Below are positions 1 through 46,041 of a DNA stretch of 64,000 bases, one piece after another. The translations under genes were made by a program, and so were the position numbers. The stretch spans positions 22,444,001 to 22,508,000 of the forward strand of contig NC_043001.1 of NCBI RefSeq assembly GCF_006345805.1, written 5' to 3'. This DNA comes from Octopus sinensis (Eukaryota). Each line of letters starts with the position of its first letter. The stretch's first letter is position 1. Under the pieces are notes generated by a model that searched no databases, was not told the origin of the DNA, and was given only the letters and a program-made list of their open reading frames with translations.

Positions 1-37
1 AATAGCACAAATTTACTTAAATATTCATAAATATGTA

Positions 38-137
38 AATGTTTATCATTACATCCTGGACTACATCAAATGTGTTCTGTCTTTGGCTACAAGGTCAGTT
101 ATTAATCTTGTAACGGGCCTCAACGTTTACAACATCA
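38..137 (+). pseudogene. 5'-truncated family A snoRNA-like copy
   Basis: Retains the 3' half of the first hairpin, ACATCA, the second hairpin and ACA. The 5' strand of hairpin 1 is missing. Confidence 0.5.
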
Positions 138-919
138 TGATGACAATATTTTAACCAATTCTATATCATATTACCATTTTTCTAATTAAGATACTTGTTT
201 CTTAATTAGTCAAGACTCCAGACTGGTTCTGTGAAACAACTTCAATATTTTATTGGTAAAATAGCACAAACGGAATGAGAGAAATAGGTGACAGTTTAAA
301 AGTGAGTGTGTCCACACAACAATAACAATCTATATACACTTGTGTGCTTTGTATTTCATGTTTATTACAAAGAAAATGTGTCCTAAAGTAGTTTGTCAGT
401 TTTCTATATTCTCAAACTTGTATATTGTTAGTTTCGTGATAATTGAATCTTGAAATTATTCATGCTTCTGTCCAGAGAAATGTTCACGTAAATATATTAG
501 AATACTCATGAAAACTTGAAGGGAATCAAATGTGCTGAAGCAGCTGGCAAGATATTCCTTTTGTCTGTATCTTGTTTGCTCACAGATGTCAACTGTAATA
601 TTGAGATAATTCAAACCAATATTGAAACTATCGGTGCATATCCATGCTGTGCACTAAATTGTGATAGCAAGGAAAGTGTTCTCACAATTTGTAATCTTCT
701 TTGGTGTGTAAATTAAGTTCCTGAAGCTATTTTGCATTGGTTTTCTTCACTCAGAACAGACGTGTATCATTAGCTTGGTGGTGATTGAGATTTCGTAGAG
801 AGTGTTGTCCATGTTTGTGTCCAGATCCATGCTATGACATTAAATATTAGAATGCTTATTATTTGGTGATAAATGTGTAAAATAATTTGTTGAATCCTGT
901 TGTAGGATATTTTGTTTCT

Positions 920-1049
920 GTCCATTTCCATGTGATGACATTATTAAGTATTGTTTATCATAACTACTTGGACTACATCAAATGTGTTCTGTCTTCGGTT
1001 GCAAGGTCAGTCATTAATCTTGTGACGGTCCTCAAAGTTCACAACATCA
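920..1049 (+). ncRNA. H/ACA snoRNA-like unit, family A, variant 2
   Basis: Hairpin (GTCCA/TGGAC) - H box ACATCA - hairpin (GTTGCAAG/CTTGTGAC, TGTG/CACA) - ACA+3 nt. Confidence 0.6.
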
Positions 1050-1178
1050 TAATAGCTATTTTTTAATAAACCATTCACACTGGTGTAACATCATCATCCT
1101 CATCGTTTAGCGTCAGGTATTGTATCTCCATGATGTCAGGTAGTTAATTGAAGGTTCACAGTATTATTCATATTCTTT

Positions 1179-1307
1179 GTCCAGTTCCATGTGATGGCAT
1201 TACTAGAATGTGTATCATAACATCCTGGGCTACATCAAATGTGTTCTGTCTTCGGCTACAAGGTCAGTCATTAATCTTGTAACGGTCCTCAATGTTCACA
1301 ACATCAT
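1179..1307 (+). ncRNA. H/ACA snoRNA-like unit, family A, variant 1
   Basis: GTCCA/TGGGC lower stem, GTGATG/TATCAT and GCATT/AATGT upper stems, H box ACATCA, 3' hairpin TACAAG/CTTGTA, ACA+3 nt; 129 nt. Confidence 0.65.
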
Positions 1308-1619
1308 AATAGCTATTTTTTAAAAAAAACATTCATACTGATGTAACAAGTACTGTATCTCCATGATGTTTTATGTTGTGGAAACGTTGAATATAGCATA
1401 AATATGGCAGTAGGTTGTATTGGAGTTTGTTGTTTGTAATAAAGAAAACAAATGTGCAGAGATGAGACATTTAAAGTTGCAAGTAAATAAAAGATAAAAC
1501 GAAATAAATTCGAAAATTATTTATACAATCTAATCATACCTTTCAGCGGTGGTGCCCCAGCATGGCCGCGGCCTTCGGGCTAAAACATTTTTAAGGATTT
1601 ATACCTATATACAATATTT

Positions 1620-2967
1620 CTATCATGGAAAGTTGTAAAAGATCCCACTGTACATACTGCAACCTTGCAGAATGCACATTGGAAAGACGTTTCAACCGGC
1701 TGTCCACTGGGAGTTTTTCTTTGTTGATAGACATTCACGGCACTGCTTTTTGTGACCCTTGAATTGTTTTCTAATTTATGGAGATTGACTGAACTCAGGG
1801 ATATCTCTCTGGCAGGCTTTGCTTTTTCTTCCTCTAGTTATTTTTTTGGAGGAATAGCCTGTCCTCAACTGCGTTGCTACATCTGCTTAGAACTGCAGAT
1901 GGTCACACCGCTATGCTCATGTTTACTATATATTACACCAGGTATCGCCATCATTTATTACTCGGTCTGCCAACCGGATAATAACTCTTCACCTGGTTCA
2001 ACCGATCCACACCATCCATGTACCTGTTATTATCAAGGTTCACAAACGGGGTGCCATTTTCATCAACACATGGTTGTGCTGTATTAGATGGGAAATTTAT
2101 GTCTCTTATCTCTGTATGTGGTTGCTAGCAGATTTCCTTTCTGCCATTGGATTATTTCATCTTTTCATTTTGCTTTTATTTATATCCAACAGCAGCCCTT
2201 TTCTACTAGCAATTACTGTAGGACATGTATACGTTGCCACAGCTTCTAACTCCACTGCAAGTTTGACTGAACTAAAAAAATTGGTCCAAAAATAATATAA
2301 GGTCCTGGTTATAGCATGGAATTGATAAATTCCACACCACATCGTACCCTAGGCCATGCTGACTAGCATTATTGTCTCTTCCCTGTATAAAAACTAAATC
2401 CACAGCAGTACTCACAAACTTTGATCTCCCATTTCATGGGCTTTCCTAGCATATACTGTTTTACATTCTGCATAATGGTTTGTTTCCGCAGTGATAGCTT
2501 TAAACAAGCATACTGGAAAAATAAGAAAATGAAGTCTAGCAGTTTCGCTTCCTAAGAAAGACTATGGGTTGACTCCGTTTCCCCAGAAAAGTTGTTGATA
2601 GAAGCATTTAAAAATTTTTTACTCCATTCCTATGTAAAATTGTCCTCTCTGTCGCTATTGCTGCTTTCAGTTTCTTCAGAATTGCTGGTTTCGGATACAG
2701 AAATATCCTATTCATTCTCATACACCACGTGCTTTTGTGCCTCATTCTTTTTCTCTATATCTCCATATCTTCCATTGAAAACCCTTCAAATTCAGAATCA
2801 CTGCTTGATAGCATGAAACTCCTATCCATTTTCAAAGTTGGAAAAAAAAAAAAAAAAAAATTGGTGCTGCAAAAATGTGGGGGAAAAGTGAAATCGTGTT
2901 TTCACGAATGTACTGAGATTTGTGTTCAAATTCACATTTAAATAACAATGGGTGCTCTACAGAAGGG
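1620..2967 (-). mobile_element. Degenerate, internally deleted piggyBac (PGBD-like) transposon
   Basis: TTAA|CCCT terminus at 2971-2964. Minus-strand remnants: MLSSSDSEFEGF (ATG 2814), FFPVCLFKAITAETNHYA, YMLGKPMKWEIKV, FLDQFFSSVKLA..TYTCPTVIASRKGL, and a C-terminal Cys-rich TSFQCAFCKVAVC. Many stops and frameshifts. Confidence 0.85.
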
Positions 2968-3072
2968 TTAATATTTTACCCAAACATACATTGTTACCAT
3001 GGTAAATCTGGATAAATCTTGAATAAATTGTAAGTAGTCGATAATTGAGTCTTCTCAGTATTCATATTCTTT

Positions 3073-3200
3073 GTCCAGTTCCATGTGATGGCATTATTAG
3101 AATGTTTATCATTACATCCTGGACTACATCAAATGTGTTCTGTCTTCGGCTACAAGGTCAGTCATTAATCTTGTAACGGTCCTCAATGTTCACAACATCA
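3073..3200 (+). ncRNA. H/ACA snoRNA-like unit, family A, variant 1
   Basis: Near-identical to 1179-1307 with the same boxes and stems. Confidence 0.65.
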
Positions 3201-3926
3201 TGATGACAATATTTTAACCAATTCTATATCATATTAGTATTTTTATAATTAAAATACTTGTTTCAACCAAATTCATGACTTTAGTCTTTTATGGGTAGAA
3301 AGACAGTCTTATAAAATTAAATAAAGTATCCTGAAATGAACCGCTCCTGCTTGGAGAGTAGTCATGAATTTCTTGAGCCGAATGCATATTTGAAAGTGGG
3401 TTCACTTAAATATTTATGACGTTACTCATATTTACTACATAAAAAGCTGATGTCTAATACTTGTCCTGCAAACTATTTTCACAGCTCATGAGCTGATTTA
3501 TACTACCCATGTAGCTGTTAAGTTAGAAGTTTATGGATGGTGTGTATCATTTAGATGCTGTTGGGCACAAGTGAATAGAGTATTCTATTTGCTCCTTTGT
3601 CCTGATGGGGTCGCTAGCCAAGTTCCTTCAATTAGTAGTACTTGATGTTAATTTCACAAATCTGCAGTAGTTTGATGTCCCATTTTGCTGGCTTGTTTGG
3701 CACATGCAGCTAGAATTATATCTTGTCATTTTATCTCGTCACCCCTAAGGCAATGGGCAGCCTGCTGGTCATGATATTGCAGATGTGAAGAGTTCACTTG
3801 TGTTCCATTGAGGCAGATTCTTAAAACTCATTCAATTTATAGCAAAGAGCTCTTGAAAATAAGAATCCGTGGTCTCTAGCTGTATCAATTTATTTTTTAC
3901 GTGATTACTGCAGTTATCTTCTAAAA

Positions 3927-4102
3927 CAGTGGTTCCCAAACTTTTTAGAGTCGCGACCCACTATTTATCACACCAGTTCATGACGGCCCATTTAGAAGTC
4001 TTGAGCTATCTCAACAGACAGCAGTTAAAGCTAATACGTAATTTTATAACTTTTTGCAACCCACTAAGATTCCGTTCGCAACTCATAGTTTGGGAACCAC
4101 TG
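3927..4102. mobile_element. hAT (Charlie-like) MITE
   Basis: TIR CAGTGGTTCCCAAACT / AGTTTGGGAACCACTG; 8-bp flanks TTCTAAAA / TTCTATAA. Confidence 0.85.
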
Positions 4103-4507
4103 TTCTATAATATTTTAGTAAATACTAGGTCAGTTTTCAGTTAGTAGGTGGATTGCACAAGGTCAGTATTTTTTAAGATTTTCACTTGTTCTGTTGCTTA
4201 CAATATTAGAAATTGAACAAGCAGTTATGCTTGTTGCATTTTTCTTCTGATTAAGCAGATCTACTGATTAAAAAGTAGTTGTTATGACATCAGTTTTTAT
4301 ATATTTGTTAGGGACTGCATTAAGGTGTACAGGTGTGTGTAATATATAAATGATGATATACAGATTTGTGTGTGTATGCCTGCTTGTATCCACTTTAAAA
4401 TGGTAACACCTTGTTATTTGTGATGCTGTTTAGTACAAAAGAAATGTCCTGAAACTATTTGCTTTCTTTTTTTTCATTTACAACATTTGTATAACATTCA
4501 TGTATCT

Positions 4508-4632
4508 GTCCAATTACCCGTGATGGCATTAAAATGTTAGAATGTTCATCATTAATCATGTGGACAACATCAAGTGTGGTCACTCGTTGCCTGCAAGATT
4601 CGTCGTCTTGATGATCTTGACCACAAACACTA
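4508..4632 (+). ncRNA. H/ACA snoRNA-like unit, divergent family A paralog
   Basis: GTCCA/TGGAC and TGATG/CATCA stems, H box ACATCA, TGTGGTCA/TGACCACA stem, ACA+3 nt. Pocket sequences differ from the other copies. Confidence 0.6.
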
Positions 4633-5452
4633 AAACTATAATATTGAATTAATTCAAACCAGTACATGAAACTGCCTGCTGTGCTCTAAATTGTTATAGC
4701 AAAAGAAATTGTTCTCACAACTTCTAATGCTTTTTGGTATGAAAAGTCAATTCCTGTAACTATTTTGCAATGGTTTTCAATCACAATAGTTCCTTGTTAG
4801 GTTGTTGATAACGGACTGGAGAATATTATGTTTGTGGCATTAAATATTGATAAACATGTCAAATTGTGTTTGATCCTCTCCTTGGCTACTGTTTTGTTTC
4901 TGCCTATATGATGACTATCATACAAATTGGAGCGTTATCATCTAAAATATTGCAGTGGGAAATAAATGATCTGTTTTCAGTCATCAGGTAGATTGCACTG
5001 GGTCAGTATCTGAAAAATCTTGTATAAGTTGTGCATCTCATGGTAGCTGGTAAAATGATGATGTTTGAGTGAAATAGTTATGTACATTAGGCAATGATTT
5101 TTGCATCCATTTAAATGTATGCAATGTTGATATGGTCATATGTTTTTCCAGTTCCCTCTTTGAAATGGCAAGAAAGTTCAGTTGCGTTTGACATTTCTTG
5201 GTTAAATCATCCATGCCAGCATGGAAGTCTGATATTCTATTAGTTCCTTTTGCTGGACTGCTAATTTACTGGCACTTAGATACACCAGCATTGGTTTTCA
5301 AGTAGTCGTGGTGGACAAAAGGACAGGCTTCATTCAGTTTCCATCTGCCAATTCCACTGACAAGACTGGTTGTCTCGAGGGCTGAGTGGAAGATACTTTC
5401 ACCAAGTGCCATACAGTGGGACAGATTGGACTGTCATTGGGAAGCTAACTTG

Positions 5453-5733
5453 GGTTACTACTAGCGAACACTGGTCCTGGTGTGCGCATCCGCCATAGCT
5501 AGTCGTAAGTGGTTGATCCTACAGCTACTTGTGCGTATGTTTAGTATTTCAGGGCTGAATACATGTCAAAGAAAATTAAATAATATTTTTCGAACAAAGT
5601 AAATAATTTTAAAACTTTATAAACAAACTAAGGTTAGAGTTAGGGTTAAATAAATAGGTTTAGGGTTAAAAAGTCGACTTAGGACTAGCTTGTGTGTGTG
5701 CATGCACTGGGACCACTGATCGCAAGTAGTACC
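5453..5733. mobile_element. MITE with GG..CC ends, 8-bp TSD and internal TTAGGG motifs (Merlin-like?)
   Basis: Imperfect TIR GGTTACTACTAGCGAACACTGGTCC / GGACCACTGATCGCAAGTAGTACC; perfect TSD CTAACTTG; inserted in an old SINE. Confidence 0.75.
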
Positions 5734-6112
5734 CTAACTTGTTACCACACCTGGTATACACGCATGTTCGAAGGAAATTTGTTTCTTTGTATACATGGTG
5801 AATGTTGCATAATTAATTCCAGAGTGAATATGATGTTGAGAAATTAGGTGGTTTTTAATAGGTCAGTGTTCTCACGATTTGTAATCTTCTTTGGTGTGTA
5901 AATTAAGTTCCTGAAGCTATTTTGCATTGGTTTTCTTCACTCAGAACAGACGTGTATCATTAGCTTGGTGGTGATTGAGATTTCGTAGAGAGTGTTGTCC
6001 ATGTTTGTGTCCAGATCCATACTATGACATTAAATATTAGAATGCTTATTATTTGGTGATAAATGTGTAAAATAATTTGTTGAATCCTGTTGTAGGATAT
6101 TGTTTTGTTTCT

Positions 6113-6242
6113 GTCCATTTCCATGTGATGACATTATTAAGTATTGTTTATCATAACTACTTGGACTACATCAAATGTGTTCTGTCTTCGGTTGCAAGGT
6201 CAGTCATTAATCTTGTGACGGTCCTCAAAGTTCACAACATCA
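6113..6242 (+). ncRNA. H/ACA snoRNA-like unit, family A, variant 2
   Basis: Copy of 920-1049 inside the 676-1310 / 5866-6505 duplication. Confidence 0.6.
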
Positions 6243-6374
6243 TAATAGCTATTTTTTAATAAACCATTCACACTGGTATAACATCATCATCATCATTGTT
6301 TAGCATCAGGTATTGTATCTCCATGATGTCAGGTAGTTGATAATTGAAGGTTCTCAGTATTATTCATATTCTTT

Positions 6375-6502
6375 GTCCAGTTCCATGTGATGGCATTACT
6401 AGAATGTTTATCATTACATCCTGGGCTACATCAAATGTGTTCTGTCTTCGGCTACAAGGTCAGTCATTAATCTTGTAACGGTCCTCAATGTTCACAACAT
6501 CA
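6375..6502 (+). ncRNA. H/ACA snoRNA-like unit, family A, variant 1
   Basis: Copy of 1179-1307 with boxes and stems intact. Confidence 0.65.
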
Positions 6503-7378
6503 TAACCGTAATGTTTTCATCTGTTCATCAGTACACTTATAACTGAAATACACACTATATTCAGGGCTTCAGATTAGTTCCGTAAAACAAGTTTTACATG
6601 ACAGATTACAATTGGCATTCTTGTAATGGTCCTCAACATTCACATCATAACAGTAGTATTTGAATCAATAATTCAAACTATTGTTGTAACTGGCACCTTC
6701 ATGTTGGAGGCTGCTGTTTGGCCACATGTCTGTCTCAATGAAACTTCGGTTTTCACATCCACTCTTCCATGCTTGTACAAATTTGCTAACTGACCTAAGC
6801 AAGGCAATATTCTTCTACAGCTAGACATGTTTTCATGAAGATTACAAACGAATGGCACTGCATGATTCATTCATTTACAATGTGATTTCCAGACGTACAT
6901 AGTGCTGCACACACCATCACTTAACGTCCCTCTTCCATGCTATCATGTTGGTTGGTTCAACAGGCACTGGTATGCCAGAGGACTGATCCTGTGCCAAGCT
7001 CCACCATCTGCTTTGGCATGGTTTTTATAGTTTGATGCCCTTCCAATCTCATTGATCACGTTAGAATATTAGAATGTTCTTCATGCAAGCATGGACAAAC
7101 ATCGTGGTCAACTGGAGCAAAATAGTCATTTTGTGTTAGTATCTTCACAAACATTGGAAAGGTAATATTGGAATAACTCAAACCAATATCGAAGCTGCCA
7201 TTGCATCCCCATGTGGGGGATTCAGCGCATGGTTACCCCAGTCAGCAAGAGAAGTGCTGGTGGTGTGCCAGAGAGTACTCTCAAGTTAAAAGGTGAATTA
7301 TTGATCCAGTGTTATTACCTGTGTTTTCAGCCTGATCATGGAATTCTTCAATGTCTTTTTTTTTCTTTTCTTTTCCAG

Positions 7379-7556
7379 CCATCCTGGATATTTTGGTAAA
7401 GTTGGTATGCGGCATTACCATTTATTAAAACACCATTATTATTGCCCAATCATCAATATAGACTCATTGTGGAATTTGGTCCCAGAAAACATCCGAACTA
7501 ATTATATGACACGTCGGCGTGACAAAAGAGCAGCAGTTATTGATTGTGTAAAACAT
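7379..7556 (+). CDS. RPL27A: 60S ribosomal protein L27a (uL15), penultimate exon
   Basis: Polypyrimidine tract + AG (7377-78), then C CAT CCT GGA = HPGYFGKVGMRHYHLLKHHYYCPIINIDSLWNLVPENIR...VIDCVKH, then GTAAGT donor at 7557. HPGYFGKVGMR is the diagnostic uL15 motif. The N-terminal exons were not found in the window. Confidence 0.95.
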
Positions 7557-8583
7557 GTAAGTTCCTACGTACAGTGTTCTTAACATGTCTCTCATATGCA
7601 TTACTTCTTAAAACTAATGCAAGTTTTTAACTTGTATATTATTATGTAATGCTACAGCAATATTGGGGAATATCCAAAGTAACTAAGTGAATTTATAGTT
7701 GCTATTTCAGCCTCAAACATATATTCATATTTGTCAACATTTTTGATATCAATCTGTTCAAGAGTGTTTATCCTACATTATCCACCTGATGTAAGGAGGT
7801 ATTTTCAAACTGGTAGAAATGCCACCTAATGGAGGAAGTAGAGCCATCAAGTTCTGAAATTACATGTTGATTGGAATTCACTATTTAAAATTATTTAGTA
7901 TGCTGTTTGTCATTTTGTGATACCAAAATGCTAGAGACTATCCAAATATAACCCTTTTGTTACTATATTTCTAACCAAGATACATCCCGTATGCGTTTCA
8001 ATCCAATTCAATTCTAAAATAATCGTAAATTTAGACAAGTTACAAAATACAACTTTTACTTAGCATGATTTTTGGATTACAATTGAAAAGCTTCCTGTTT
8101 GAAAGCAAATTTAATTACAGGTAAATTCAACAAAATATAAGATTAAAATTTTGTTTAAGCATCAACTTCGGAAATGAATTATTTGTTAATATTCAATGAG
8201 TACACAACAAAATTTTAATAGTGGAGAATTATGCAAATTATTGGATTATTGGATTATTTATCAGTTGAACCTCATACACTTAAGGCAGGTGTACCATAAA
8301 GGTAAAACGAAATACTAGGGTTTGTCTTATGAAACTACTCGACACCTAAATTTTTCTTTTTACTGATGCAACTGTCTTATTCCCAAGGATATCATGGTGA
8401 CAACTTTGGATCTCAAAATACAATAACCGAGATTAGTTCCAGTACTTCGTTAGTTCATCAATAATTTGTATTTTTAGTTGTTTCTGCAAGTAAATTTATG
8501 TTTTCAAATATTCTACACAAGTAATTTTCGTTTAGTTTTCTGTACCTAAATTTTTGTTAATTTTCATTTTGTTTTATTTGCAG

Positions 8584-8712
8584 GGTTATTTTAAAGTACT
8601 TGGTAAGGGAGAAATTCCTAAAGCCCCAGTTATTGTGAAAGCTAAGTTTTTCAGTAAACTAGCTGAACAGAAAATCAAGGCTGCTGGTGGAGCTTGTCTT
8701 CTTGTTCCATGA
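8584..8712 (+). CDS. RPL27A: 60S ribosomal protein L27a, last coding exon
   Basis: tttgcag acceptor, [42 protein letters not shown], in frame with the previous exon. AATAAA about 22 nt after the stop. Confidence 0.95.
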
Positions 8713-44773: not shown

Positions 44774-46041
44774 CGAGGGGCGTTCAATAAGTAAAGCCCC
44801 TGACCCACTTCCCATAGCAGTAGAGCAACGAAACTTGGCAAAGTTATTAGTCTTTTTCTACATAGGAACTACCCAGAGTTACGCATTTCTCCCATCGTTT
44901 GATGCAGCTCTGGATACCGTTTTTTGTAGAAGACCCCAGTTTGGTCCTCCAACCACGACGTGACTTCAGAAATCAAGGCTGCATCATCTGGGAAACGCTT
45001 TCCTTTCAAAAACAACTTCATGGCTGGGAAGAGGTGAAAATCAGAGGGTGCAAGGTCAGGAGAGTAGGGGGATGGGGGAGGAGTTCATAGCCGCACGCCT
45101 GTGCTTCTGATCTGGCGACAAGCGAGTTGTGGACCGGAGCGTTGTCCTGCAGGAGGAGGATGCCTTTGCCCCGCCTCTTGATTTTGATAGTTTCTCTTAA
45201 TTTCCTCAAAAGTGAAGCATAATAGGCTCCTGTAATTGTGGAACCCTTTGCCAGGAAATCTGTCATCACTACTCCGTCCTGGTCCCAGAAGACTGTGAGC
45301 ATGACCTTGCCATCGGAGGGCTGCACCCTTGCCTTCTTTGGAGGAGGTGAGTCACGGTGATTCCACTGCATTGACTGGGCTTTGGTCTCTGGATCATAGT
45401 GATGGACCCAGGTTTCATCCTGTGTAATCAGTCTTTTGAAAAATTTTGACTCATCTTCTTGGCACATCTCCAAATTCATCCTCAAGCACTCGACGCGTTC
45501 TTGCTTCTGGAAAGGTGTGAGCAACCTGGGAATCCATCTGGCAGACACCTTTTGCATATGCAAATGGTCATGAATGATAGTTTCCACAGACCTGGTACTA
45601 ATCTTGACCTCATGGGCTATTTGGCGAATAGTTATGCGTCGATCTTCCAAAATGGCAGCCTCAACTTGACGGACAGATGCCTCATCAATGGCAGAAGGGG
45701 GGCGACCAGATCTGGGAGCTGTTTCCACAGAGTTCCAACCATGTTTGAATCCACGATGCCATCGTTTTACAAGGTCATATGATGGGGCATCATCACCATA
45801 AGTTACTTTCATTTCATGAAAAGTCTCCTGTGATGTGCGTCCTTTCAAATACAAAAACCGGATCACTGCTCGACACTCAACAGGCTCCATTTCACACTTG
45901 ACTCAGTTCAAACACCTGTAAATCAGAAACCACAATTAGTTCAGAGCTGTAATTTGCCACTTAATCTATAGAGATATGAATAATTGCACATGCAAAATTT
46001 CAGCAAGTGGGTCAGGGGCATTACTTATTGAACGCCCCTCG
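44774..46041 (-). mobile_element. mariner DD34D transposon (irritans/Himar1-like), copy 1
   Basis: TIRs CGAGGGGCGTTCAATAAGTAA.., TA TSD. ORF from 45890 with RSGRP, WIPRLLT, ITQDETW and QDNA motifs; -1 frameshift at HPPYSPDLAP; 12-bp deletion relative to copy 2. Confidence 0.95.

What the first reader, a model, noticed from the sequence alone, without database searches (positions are those of the whole stretch)
38..7130. Tandemly amplified H/ACA snoRNA-like family filling the region upstream of the RPL27A exons
Seen: six full 125-130 nt units (920, 1179, 3073, 4508, 6113, 6375) with hairpin-ACATCA-hairpin-ACA+3 architecture. Partial or decayed relatives lie at about 38-137, 470-590, 819-870, 6009-6060, 6600-6650 and 7040-7130. 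Differences between variants preserve pairing: GCTACAAG/CTTGTAAC versus GTTGCAAG/CTTGTGAC, and TGGAC versus TGGGC against GTCCA. Known: ribosomal protein genes host intronic snoRNAs (vertebrate RPL27A hosts SNORA3-family RNAs), normally one per intron. Inference: a polycistronic intronic array of one snoRNA family, grown by local duplication inside a single intron of 7 kb or more, would be unusual for an animal. It would need endonucleolytic processing or hidden non-coding micro-exons; CAG|GTATTG and CAG|GTAGTT donor-like sites recur between units at about 1097/1140 and 6310/6332.
Basis: partly seen in the sequence, partly recalled or inferred. Interest (0 to 1): 0.75.

Follow-up and report, generated by a model that had tools for sequence, protein, structure and literature searches.

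The report
Amplified H/ACA snoRNA genes in octopus RPL27A intron
The repeats are copies of a previously uncatalogued small nucleolar RNA gene, probably a guide for a conserved pseudouridine in 18S ribosomal RNA, that multiplied inside one intron of the Octopus ribosomal protein gene RPL27A; it is real and neat, but a known kind of gene in a known kind of arrangement.

Summary
The window is Octopus sinensis. Positions 1-7378 are the 3' part of RPL27A intron 3. It carries five full 130-nt 'A' units (919, 1178, 3072, 6112, 6374), one variant 'B' unit (4507), one truncated A copy and several relics. All lie on the host strand and fold as hairpin-ACAUCA-hairpin-ACA.

O. vulgaris has 10 full A copies in the same intron and O. 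bimaculoides has 6. Argonauta hians has one A copy plus one related unit. Between Argonauta and Octopus, the only conserved non-exon sequences in the gene are the A unit, ending at its ACA box, and a separate SNORA14-like snoRNA in intron 4.

No Rfam family matches the A unit. Its invariant 3' pocket pairs 4+8 bp with 18S GAGG-UU-CGAAGACG, with the ACA box 14 nt away. This is the human Ψ1045/Ψ1046 site guided by SNORA57. The complementarity is no better than shuffled rRNA gives.

Covariation is weak, and no expression or processing data could be obtained.

Several snoRNAs in one intron are already known in flies and rice, so the "unusual for an animal" claim is overstated.

Verdict: a new H/ACA snoRNA family amplified by local duplication. 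Interest is moderate.

The parts
1..7378 (+). 3' part of RPL27A (uL15) intron 3 of Octopus sinensis. The intron starts about 2.2 kb upstream of the window (L004 ~7411) and is about 9.6 kb in all.
   Evidence: Window 1-372 is 100% identical to L004 9632-10003, and exons 2-3 map to L004 6868-6936 and 7331-7410. Exon 4 starts at 7379 after an AG acceptor.
9..138 (+). Truncated A copy. Hairpin 1 lacks its 5' arm. The H box (63), the 3' hairpin and ACA (129/132) are present. Probable pseudogene.
   Evidence: (95 bits; the same copy seen whole in L004 9649-9774 scores 95 bits against 160-170 for intact copies).
469..600 (+). Decayed B-like relic with no H box.
   Evidence: Alignment only. It shares the downstream flank GTAATATTGA..AATTCAAACC with the units at 4507 and 7040 (D5). 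blastn and the model do not detect it.
675..1309 (+). 641-bp block holding two A copies; first copy of a duplication.
   Evidence: 97.7% identical to 5865-6505. There are 2/262 differences inside the units against 13/379 outside.
818..863 (+). Relic of a 5' hairpin only.
   Evidence: blastn 78% over 46 nt, E 8e-5; no H or ACA box.
919..1050 (+). Full A unit, variant with GUUGCAAG/CUUGUGAC upper stem. H box at 975, ACA at 1044.
   Evidence: (160.6 bits).
1178..1307 (+). Full A unit. H box at 1232, ACA at 1301.
   Evidence: (168.8 bits).
3072..3201 (+). Full A unit. H box at 3126, ACA at 3195.
   Evidence: (168.7 bits).
4507..4634 (+). B unit: 5' hairpin homologous to A, unrelated 3' hairpin. 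H box ACAUCA at 4567 (or ACAACA at 4564); ACA at 4627. Present in O. vulgaris (L003 16052) but not found in O. bimaculoides.
   Evidence: z -2.0; 55 bits.
5865..6505 (+). Second copy of the 641-bp two-unit block.
6008..6053 (+). Relic of a 5' hairpin only (duplicate of 818-863).
6112..6243 (+). Full A unit, identical to 919-1050 over the unit. H box at 6168, ACA at 6237.
   Evidence: (160.6 bits).
6374..6503 (+). Full A unit. H box at 6428, ACA at 6497.
   Evidence: (168.9 bits).
6537..6653 (+). Decayed copy; only the 3' end (6619-6648) is recognisable.
   Evidence: blastn 87% over 30 nt; model 16 bits, E 0.27.
7040..7165 (+). B-like relic about 215 nt upstream of exon 4, with no ANANNA box. 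Orthologous by flank to L001 ~26380.
7379..7556 (+). RPL27A exon 4 (HPGYFGK...DCVKH).
   Evidence: (98% to O. bimaculoides uL15).
8584..8709 (+). RPL27A exon 5 with stop codon.

Best explanation
The units are genes for a box H/ACA small nucleolar RNA of about 130 nt, hosted on the sense strand of intron 3 of the ribosomal protein gene RPL27A (uL15) of Octopus sinensis.

Shown:
- Each unit has the H/ACA architecture.
- All copies lie on the host strand and only in this one intron.
- The unit is the only conserved island of the intron between Argonauta and Octopus.
- One A copy is present in Argonauta, 6 in O. bimaculoides and 10 or more full copies in O. vulgaris.
- The copies arose by DNA-level duplication together with their flanks. 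One set is an ~870-bp-period tandem array. Another is a 641-bp two-copy block duplicated 5.2 kb away.

Inferred:
- The intron is transcribed with the host pre-mRNA.
- Dyskerin, NOP10, NHP2 and GAR1 assemble on each unit.
- After splicing and debranching, exonucleases trim the RNA to the protected particles.
- The 3' pocket then pairs with 18S rRNA. The 5' strand UGUCUUCG pairs with CGAAGACG and the 3' strand CCUC pairs with GAGG. This leaves UU unpaired 14 nt from the ACA box. The U equivalent to human U1045, and perhaps U1046, would be converted to pseudouridine. In human this job is done by the 3' hairpin of SNORA57.
- Internal copies need either an endonucleolytic cut between units or they stay joined.
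- Some copies are decaying: the truncated and relic copies in the window, and three O. bimaculoides copies with a shortened ACA spacing.
For: Architecture:
- Two hairpins, ACAUCA hinge and terminal ACA are present in all full copies.
- 98.7% of stem cells pair across 19 distinct copies, and 13 pairs vary on one side only and stay paired.

Host and strand:
- Exons and introns were mapped in four octopods.
- All model hits lie on the + strand and within intron 3.

Conservation:
- In a whole-gene blastn of Argonauta against Octopus, only the exons, the A unit (L002 8633-8761, ending at the ACA box) and a SNORA14-like element in intron 4 align.
- The H box, the lower-stem 5' strand and the 5' guide strand (CUACAUCAAnUGUGUUCUGUCUUC) are almost invariant, against 24% overall divergence of the unit.
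- Units are better conserved than their flanks. Between O. sinensis and O. bimaculoides the figures are 86.7% against 53%. In the O. vulgaris array they are 97.5% against 93.9%. In the window duplicate, differences are 2/262 against 13/379.

Target:
- GAGG-UU-CGAAGACG ranks first or second by energy in two metazoan-type rDNA units.
- The segment is present in 27 of 31 rDNA loci.
- The spacing to the ACA box is 14 nt in both Octopus and Argonauta.
- C-to-U changes in the Argonauta 3' strand (CCUC to UUUU) keep pairing with the target Gs.
- The site lies 79 nt downstream of the site predicted for the neighbouring SNORA14-like RNA. Vertebrate SNORA14 guides 18S-966 (PMC6984369), so the A site is 1045.
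- Ψ1045 and Ψ1046 exist in human 18S and depend on the SNORA57 3' hairpin (PMC8763049, PMC6984369, PMC6182160).
Against: - No RNA evidence of any kind was available: no ~130-nt transcript, no mapped 3' end, no dyskerin association.
- No Rfam family, including SNORA57, matches even at E 10 on a 151-nt query.
- Single-sequence folds are only mildly better than shuffles (z -1.0 to -2.7).
- Only two pairs show a change on both sides.
- The rRNA complementarity is not better than chance. 75 of 200 shuffled rRNAs give an equal or better best site. The SNORA14-like positive control does not beat shuffles either (27/100).
- The pairing leaves three guide nucleotides unpaired under the upper stem. Many copies have A instead of G at the position facing C1047.
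- The lower stem of the 3' hairpin is only 4 bp in the O. sinensis/vulgaris copies, against 6-7 bp in Argonauta and O. bimaculoides.
- The Octopus 18S sequence itself was not available.
- The 5' pocket is not conserved and has no convincing target.
- The unit was not found in RPL27A of Patella, Lottia or Liolophura.
Confidence: 0.7

Rival explanations
1. Only one or a few copies are working snoRNA genes. The rest are neutral by-products of segmental duplication and unequal crossing-over in a long, repeat-prone intron, and are on their way to becoming pseudogenes.
For: - The window holds a truncated copy and at least five relics.
- Three of six O. bimaculoides copies have lost one ACA, so the spacing falls to 11 nt.
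- Argonauta manages with one A copy.
- The 870-bp array has 2 copies in the O. sinensis assembly and 4 in O. vulgaris, as expected for unstable repeats.
Against: - Five window copies and ten O. vulgaris copies keep both boxes and both stems.
- Units diverge less than their spacers, although gene conversion could also produce this.
- This reading overlaps with the main explanation rather than excluding it.
Confidence: 0.35
2. Because several snoRNP-forming units sit in one intron, exonucleolytic trimming stops at the outermost particles. The main products would then be long intron-derived RNAs capped at both ends by H/ACA units (sno-lncRNAs), with or without some monomeric snoRNA.
For: Two snoRNAs in one intron give sno-lncRNAs in mammals, and SLERT is an H/ACA-ended example (PMC11028025). 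The window has unit pairs 130 nt to several kb apart in a single intron.
Against: There are no RNA data. Flies and plants process several snoRNAs from one intron into monomers. The spacers are poorly conserved between species, so a sequence-dependent lncRNA function is not indicated.
Confidence: 0.2
3. The 'intron' contains unannotated non-coding micro-exons, so that each unit really sits in its own small intron, as in snoRNA host genes with repeated exons.
For: CAGGTA donor-like sites lie downstream of units at 1114/1137 and 6307/6330. One (CAGGTATTG) is also present after the orthologous O. bimaculoides copy at L001 24755.
Against: - The window sites are the same sequence counted twice within a duplicated block.
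- CAGGTA also occurs elsewhere in the intron (1939, 4985).
- The protein models held for four species (149 aa, plus a 160-aa O. sinensis isoform that differs only in exon 1) map to the same exons with nothing inside intron 3.
- Nothing but the unit is conserved with Argonauta.
Confidence: 0.07
4. The units are not RNA genes at all. They would be a hairpin-rich satellite or a mobile element (for example a retroposed snoRNA-like SINE) that happens to sit in this intron.
For: The family has no Rfam match, and folding z-scores are modest. A genome-wide survey could not be run.
Against: - The unit keeps its position, strand and boundaries between Argonauta and Octopus while the rest of the intron is unalignable.
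- Copies duplicate together with their flanks, without poly(A) tails.
- No copy occurs outside intron 3 in about 150 kb of octopod sequence.
- The H and ACA boxes are invariant.
Confidence: 0.05

Closest known systems
Human/vertebrate SNORA57 (ACA57, Rfam RF00191)
   Same: It is a box H/ACA snoRNA. The 3' hairpin of SNORA57 guides 18S Ψ1045 and Ψ1046, through a loosely structured distal stem and alternative pairings (PMC8763049). The octopus A unit's 3' pocket is complementary to the same 18S segment with canonical 14-nt spacing. The lower part of its upper stem is also interrupted by mismatches.
   Different: There is no detectable sequence or structure similarity to the Rfam model. The 5' hairpin of the A unit shows no complementarity to the 18S-1004 site that the SNORA57 5' hairpin guides. 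In Argonauta a separate unit may cover that site with its 3' hairpin. Whether the host gene differs was not checked here.
Intronic snoRNA gene clusters of rice and Drosophila
   Same: Several snoRNA genes, often isoforms of one snoRNA, lie in the same orientation within a single intron of a host gene (PMC2780460, PMC6619189).
   Different: Here up to 10 or more near-identical H/ACA copies lie in one intron of a ribosomal protein gene of a mollusc, spread over 10-15 kb and interleaved with relics. Processing in cephalopods is unstudied, and the literature search found no study of octopus snoRNAs.
sno-lncRNAs, including the H/ACA-ended SLERT
   Same: The genomic precondition is met: two or more snoRNP-forming units within one excised intron (PMC11028025).
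   Different: No RNA evidence here. SLERT arises by exon skipping between two snoRNA-bearing introns. The spacers here are not conserved.
Vertebrate RPL27A-hosted SNORA3/SNORA45
   Same: Same host gene family and same snoRNA class.
   Different: No Rfam hit to these or any other H/ACA family on the units, even at E 10. No evidence of orthology.
SNORA14 (Rfam RF00397)
   Same: This is the neighbour of the array, not the array itself. A single canonical H/ACA RNA in intron 4 (window 7596-7722) matches this family and is predicted to pair with the 18S-966 site.
   Different: It is single copy, one per intron and unrelated in sequence to the A/B units. It shows what the ordinary arrangement looks like in the same gene.

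Membership tests
Box H/ACA snoRNA | Hairpin-hinge-hairpin-tail fold with an H box (ANANNA) in the hinge | tested here: met
   All five A copies and B fold this way. ACAUCA is invariant in all but one of 23 copies from four species (ACAUAA in one O. vulgaris copy, which still fits ANANNA).
Box H/ACA snoRNA | ACA box directly after the 3' hairpin, 3 nt from the mature 3' end | tested here: inconclusive
   ACA follows the 3' stem in all full window copies and in Argonauta, and homology with Argonauta ends at it. The mature 3' end cannot be known without RNA data.
Box H/ACA snoRNA | Internal pocket that pairs with a target on both sides of an unpaired UN, 14-16 nt upstream of the H or ACA box | tested here: met
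   The 3' pocket pairs CCUC/GAGG and UGUCUUCG/CGAAGACG around UU, 14 nt from ACA in Octopus and Argonauta. For the 5' pocket the result is inconclusive: it is small, variable, and has no conserved target.
Box H/ACA snoRNA | Target is a known pseudouridine in rRNA or snRNA | tested here: inconclusive
   The predicted site equals human 18S Ψ1045/1046. However, the complementarity is not above shuffled controls, and neither Octopus 18S nor its modifications were available.
Box H/ACA snoRNA | Structure supported by covariation | tested here: inconclusive
   98.7% of cells are paired, 13 pairs vary on one side and 2 on both. 19-29 of 500 shuffles reach the observed values. The copies are too similar to give power.
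Box H/ACA snoRNA | Stable ~130-nt RNA bound by dyskerin/NOP10/NHP2/GAR1 | not testable with these tools
   No expression data were accessible.
Rfam SNORA57 (RF00191) | Score at or above the family's gathering threshold | tested here: not met
   No hit at gathering threshold, nor at E up to 10 on 7.5 kb or on a single 151-nt unit.
Rfam SNORA3/SNORA45 (vertebrate RPL27A residents) | Score against the family models | tested here: not met
   No hit at E up to 10.
Intronic snoRNA gene cluster | Two or more snoRNA genes, sense to the host, inside one intron with no intervening annotated exon | tested here: met
   Exon mapping in O. bimaculoides, O. vulgaris, O. sinensis and Argonauta places all units between exon 3 and exon 4. 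Unannotated exons cannot be excluded.
sno-lncRNA | Stable non-polyadenylated RNA with snoRNA ends spanning the spacer | not testable with these tools
   Only the genomic precondition is met.
scaRNA (Cajal-body H/ACA) | CAB box (UGAG) in a terminal loop | tested here: not met
   The terminal loops read AUUAG/ACUAG and CAGUCAUUA in the A copies, with no UGAG (sequence).
Retroposed snoRNA / SINE-like dispersed repeat | Dispersed copies with poly(A) tail and target-site duplications, independent of flanks | tested here: not met
   Copies share extended flanks (870-bp and 641-bp units). None occurs outside intron 3 in about 150 kb searched. A genome-wide search was not possible.

The most novel reading that the evidence does not exclude
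In Octopus, a highly expressed ribosomal protein gene carries ten or so H/ACA snoRNPs on a single intron. One possibility is that cephalopods have an endonucleolytic pathway that frees intronic snoRNAs from polycistronic introns. The other is that the intron yields a family of H/ACA-capped long nuclear RNAs. The amplification is specific to Octopus and absent in Argonauta. It might be selected for dosage, or for new guide specificities carried by the variable 5' pockets and the B unit.
Probability: 0.2. Interest if true: 0.6.

Novelty: new member of a known kind. Interest (0 to 1): 0.4.

Why it matters
- It adds an unannotated H/ACA snoRNA family to a group, the cephalopods, whose snoRNAs have not been catalogued. 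Homology-based annotation misses this family because it has no Rfam match.
- If the target assignment is right, the 18S Ψ1045/1046 pair is guided in molluscs by an RNA with no recognisable similarity to vertebrate SNORA57. That bears on how guide functions are kept while the guides turn over.
- The series from one A copy in Argonauta to 6-10 or more in Octopus is a clean natural case of how snoRNA genes multiply inside a host intron.
- It is also a ready test of what animal cells make from an intron that carries many snoRNPs: monomers or sno-lncRNAs.

Tried and rejected
- Rfam at gathering and at E up to 10, on the window, the 7.5-kb region, a single unit and four octopod loci, gave no hit on the units. 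The SNORA3/SNORA45 idea was therefore dropped.
- Tandem Repeats Finder found nothing, because the periods exceed 500. Self-blast was used instead.
- The first target scan timed out.
- The 5' pocket of A gave only 'UAGUG-UU-GCAUGGAA', found in two of three rDNAs. The pocket is not conserved among copies or in Argonauta, so this was not adopted.
- The 3' pocket of B has no conserved rRNA site.
- The 5' pocket of B pairs 6+8 bp with 18S UGGUGA-UA-ACGGGUAA. This puts the U 18 nt from ACAUCA, or 15 nt if ACAACA is the box. It was left open.
- The model search in RPL27A loci of Patella, Lottia and Liolophura gave only noise (E 0.28 or worse, and not in the intron), and Rfam found nothing there.
- The Drosophila source paper (Huang 2005) is not held. 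Secondary sources were cited instead.
- ARAGORN finds no tRNA, so the Rfam tRNA hit at 34027-34085 is only a fragment.
- Decapodiform cephalopod loci could not be fetched. The only candidates were short Logan contigs, and the 112-aa product of the one examined reads straight across the exon junctions.

Full report
**Where the window comes from**

The two RPL27A (uL15) exons in the window are 7379-7556 and 8584-8709 on the + strand. Joined, they are 98% identical to Octopus bimaculoides uL15. Window 1-372 is 100% identical to the end of a locus fetched from the Octopus sinensis assembly GCA_006345805.1 (L004). The O. vulgaris locus L003 is 98.6% identical over 12 kb. The window is therefore O. 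sinensis.

Mapping the annotated proteins gives the same five-exon gene in four octopods. Everything in window 1-7378 is the 3' part of intron 3. Intron 3 is about 9.6 kb in O. sinensis, 11.3 kb in O. vulgaris, 15 kb in O. bimaculoides and 2.2 kb in Argonauta hians.

**The observation**

Full units start at 919, 1178, 3072, 6112 and 6374 (type A), and at 4507 (type B). B has a homologous 5' hairpin and an unrelated 3' hairpin.

Each unit folds into two hairpins separated by ACAUCA and followed by ACA. The minus strand folds no better than shuffled sequence.

A covariance model built from 23 copies of four species gave these results:
- The window A copies score 160-169 bits.
- B scores 55 bits.
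- The truncated copy at the window start scores 95 bits.
- No hit lies on the minus strand.
- No hit lies outside intron 3 in 152 kb of octopod sequence.

The word 'tandem' needs qualifying:
- Tandem Repeats Finder finds no array with a period up to 500.
- The window holds a 641-bp block with two A copies, present twice 5.19 kb apart (675-1309 = 5865-6505, 97.7%), plus single copies.
- The true head-to-tail array has a period of about 870 bp and lies upstream of the window. It has 4 copies in O. vulgaris and 2 in the O. sinensis assembly.

The donor-like CAGGTA sites (1114/1137 and 6307/6330) recur because they lie inside the duplicated block.

**Is it a functional RNA gene?**

The strongest evidence is comparative.

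*Copy numbers.* O. bimaculoides has six A copies and O. vulgaris has ten full A copies plus a truncated one and a B. In both species all lie in intron 3 on the sense strand. Argonauta has one A copy (L002 8634-8761, 76% identical). It also has a second H/ACA-like unit (7689-7832) with a related 5' hairpin and a different 3' hairpin.

*Conserved islands.* In a sensitive blastn of the whole Argonauta gene against the Octopus genes, only three things align:
- the exons;
- the A unit, with homology ending exactly at the ACA box;
- a stretch just downstream of exon 4.

*Conservation within the unit.* The H box, the 5' strand of the lower stem and the 5' strand of the 3' pocket are almost invariant, against 24% overall divergence. 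The 5' pocket differs on both strands.

*Units against flanks*:
- O. sinensis against O. bimaculoides: units 86.7% identical, flanks about 53%.
- O. vulgaris array: units 97.5%, spacers 93.9%.
- Window duplicate: 2/262 differences in units, 13/379 outside.

*Covariation.* This is weak, as expected for young paralogues. 98.7% of stem cells pair and 13 pairs vary on one side only while staying paired. Only 2 pairs change on both sides, and 19-29 of 500 shuffles do as well.

**What it probably does**

No Rfam family matches the units, even at E 10 on a single 151-nt unit.

To predict targets I fetched metazoan-type rDNA units from metagenome contigs using a 5.8S motif. I then scanned 18S-5.8S-28S for sites of the form arm-UN-arm.

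*The A 3' pocket.* The site GAGG-UU-CGAAGACG in 18S is the best-scoring site in one rDNA and the second best in another (4+8 bp, one G-U). The segment occurs in 27 of 31 rDNA loci. The first pairing nucleotide is 14 nt from the second ACA in both Octopus and Argonauta. That is the canonical spacing, and it also identifies the second ACA as the box. The Argonauta 3' strand reads UUUU where Octopus reads CCUC, so its changes keep pairing with the target Gs.

*Positive control and ruler.* I used the other conserved element, a single canonical H/ACA RNA in intron 4 (window 7596-7722). It matches Rfam SNORA14 at 35.7 bits in Argonauta (gathering score 36) and 21 bits in the window. Its 3' pocket picks UGAAAU-UC-UUGGAU as its top site. 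Vertebrate SNORA14 guides 18S-966 (PMC6984369).

*Numbering.* The A site lies exactly 79 nt downstream of the SNORA14-like site, so it corresponds to human U1045. My own count on the human 18S sequence as I remember it gives the same number.

*The human equivalent.* Ψ1045 and Ψ1046 are near-stoichiometric in human 18S (PMC6182160). Both depend on the 3' hairpin of SNORA57, which uses alternative pairings under a loosely structured distal stem (PMC8763049; PMC6984369).

*Limits of the assignment:*
- 75 of 200 shuffled rRNAs give an equal or better best site. The control RNA does no better (27/100), so this statistic has little power either way.
- Three guide nucleotides stay unpaired under the upper stem.
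- Many copies have A instead of G opposite C1047. This would favour the U1046 register with a one-nucleotide bulge.
- Octopus 18S itself was not available.

I put the target assignment at roughly even odds, and the H/ACA snoRNA identity at about 0.8.

**How the copies could be made into RNA**

None of what follows is shown; all of it is inferred from established snoRNA biology. H/ACA proteins assemble on the nascent intron. After splicing and debranching, exonucleases trim the RNA to the protected particles.

With several particles on one intron, two outcomes are possible. The inner spacers may be cut by an endonuclease, as must happen in the intronic clusters of rice and Drosophila (PMC2780460, PMC6619189). 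Otherwise the products are long RNAs with snoRNA ends, that is sno-lncRNAs, including the H/ACA-ended SLERT (PMC11028025).

Hidden exons are a third possibility but have nothing specific in their favour.

Not all copies are likely to work:
- The window has a truncated copy and several relics.
- Three of six O. bimaculoides copies have lost one ACA, leaving 11-nt spacing.
- The lower stem of the 3' hairpin is only 4 bp in the O. sinensis/vulgaris copies, against 6-7 bp in Argonauta and O. bimaculoides.

**Comparison with what is known, and novelty**

In function the A unit resembles the 3' half of SNORA57.

In organisation it is an intronic snoRNA gene cluster, which is known from rice and Drosophila. 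It also meets the genomic precondition for sno-lncRNAs.

It was not found in RPL27A of a limpet, an owl limpet or a chiton, so its position may be specific to octopods. The model, built from close relatives, is not very sensitive.

A literature search found no study of octopus snoRNAs.

I rate it a new member of a known kind. The points of interest are the scale of same-intron amplification in a ribosomal protein gene, the one-to-many series across octopods, and the possible replacement of a conserved guide function by an unrelated-looking RNA.

**What could not be done**

- A genome-wide copy count. About 100 kb of non-intron-3 sequence is too little to exclude a moderately dispersed family.
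- Any expression or processing evidence.
- Any direct pseudouridine mapping.
- Any squid, cuttlefish or Nautilus locus.

Noticed in passing
window 7596-7722 (+), RPL27A intron 4; L002 9552-9675: A single canonical H/ACA snoRNA lies about 40 nt after the exon 4 donor: hairpin, ACAGCA, hairpin, ACA + UAU. It matches Rfam SNORA14 at 35.7 bits in Argonauta (gathering 36) and 21.3 bits in the window. It is conserved between Argonauta and Octopus. Its 3' pocket picks the 18S-966-equivalent site as its best target.
   Followed up: yes
L002 7689-7832 (+), Argonauta hians RPL27A intron 3: A second H/ACA-like unit lies 945 nt upstream of the A copy, with H box ACAUUA and ACA + AAC. Its 5' hairpin is related to A/B. 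Its 3' pocket pairs with 18S AGCAU-UU-GCCAA, which brackets the U1002-1004 run. Human Ψ1004 is guided there by the 5' hairpin of SNORA57. The spacing to ACA is only about 12 nt. The Octopus relics at window 7040-7165 and L001 ~26380 look like its decayed orthologues.
   Followed up: partly
L003 8728-11608 versus L004 8538-9527: The ~870-bp-period tandem array at the 5' side of intron 3 has four copies in the O. vulgaris assembly and two in O. sinensis. This is either real copy-number variation or assembly collapse.
   Followed up: no
window 4507-4566 (5' hairpin of unit B): The 5' pocket of B pairs 6+8 bp, the 8 all Watson-Crick, with 18S UGGUGA-UA-ACGGGUAA in two of three rDNAs. The spacing is 18 nt from ACAUCA, or 15 nt if ACAACA is the H box. 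It is unclear whether this is a new guide specificity or chance.
   Followed up: partly
window 45018-45890 (-): A 290-aa open reading frame carries a Mos1-type HTH domain (PF17906) and the mariner transposase DDE part (PF01359, E 1e-23): a mariner-like transposon remnant.
   Followed up: partly
window 34027-34085 (-): Rfam scores a tRNA-like fragment here at 38.6 bits (model positions 7-64 of 71), but ARAGORN calls no tRNA. It is possibly the head of a tRNA-derived SINE or a truncated pseudogene.
   Followed up: partly
window 2838-2860 and the surrounding 2127-2958: A run of about 21 A sits inside a block that aligns at 78% with O. bimaculoides L001 17598-18355, just upstream of an A copy in both species. 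It may be an old retroposon insertion that was carried along with the duplications.
   Followed up: no
L001 33358-38048 (-): The gene downstream of RPL27A in O. bimaculoides encodes an NF-YA-type protein (PF02045), on the opposite strand.
   Followed up: no
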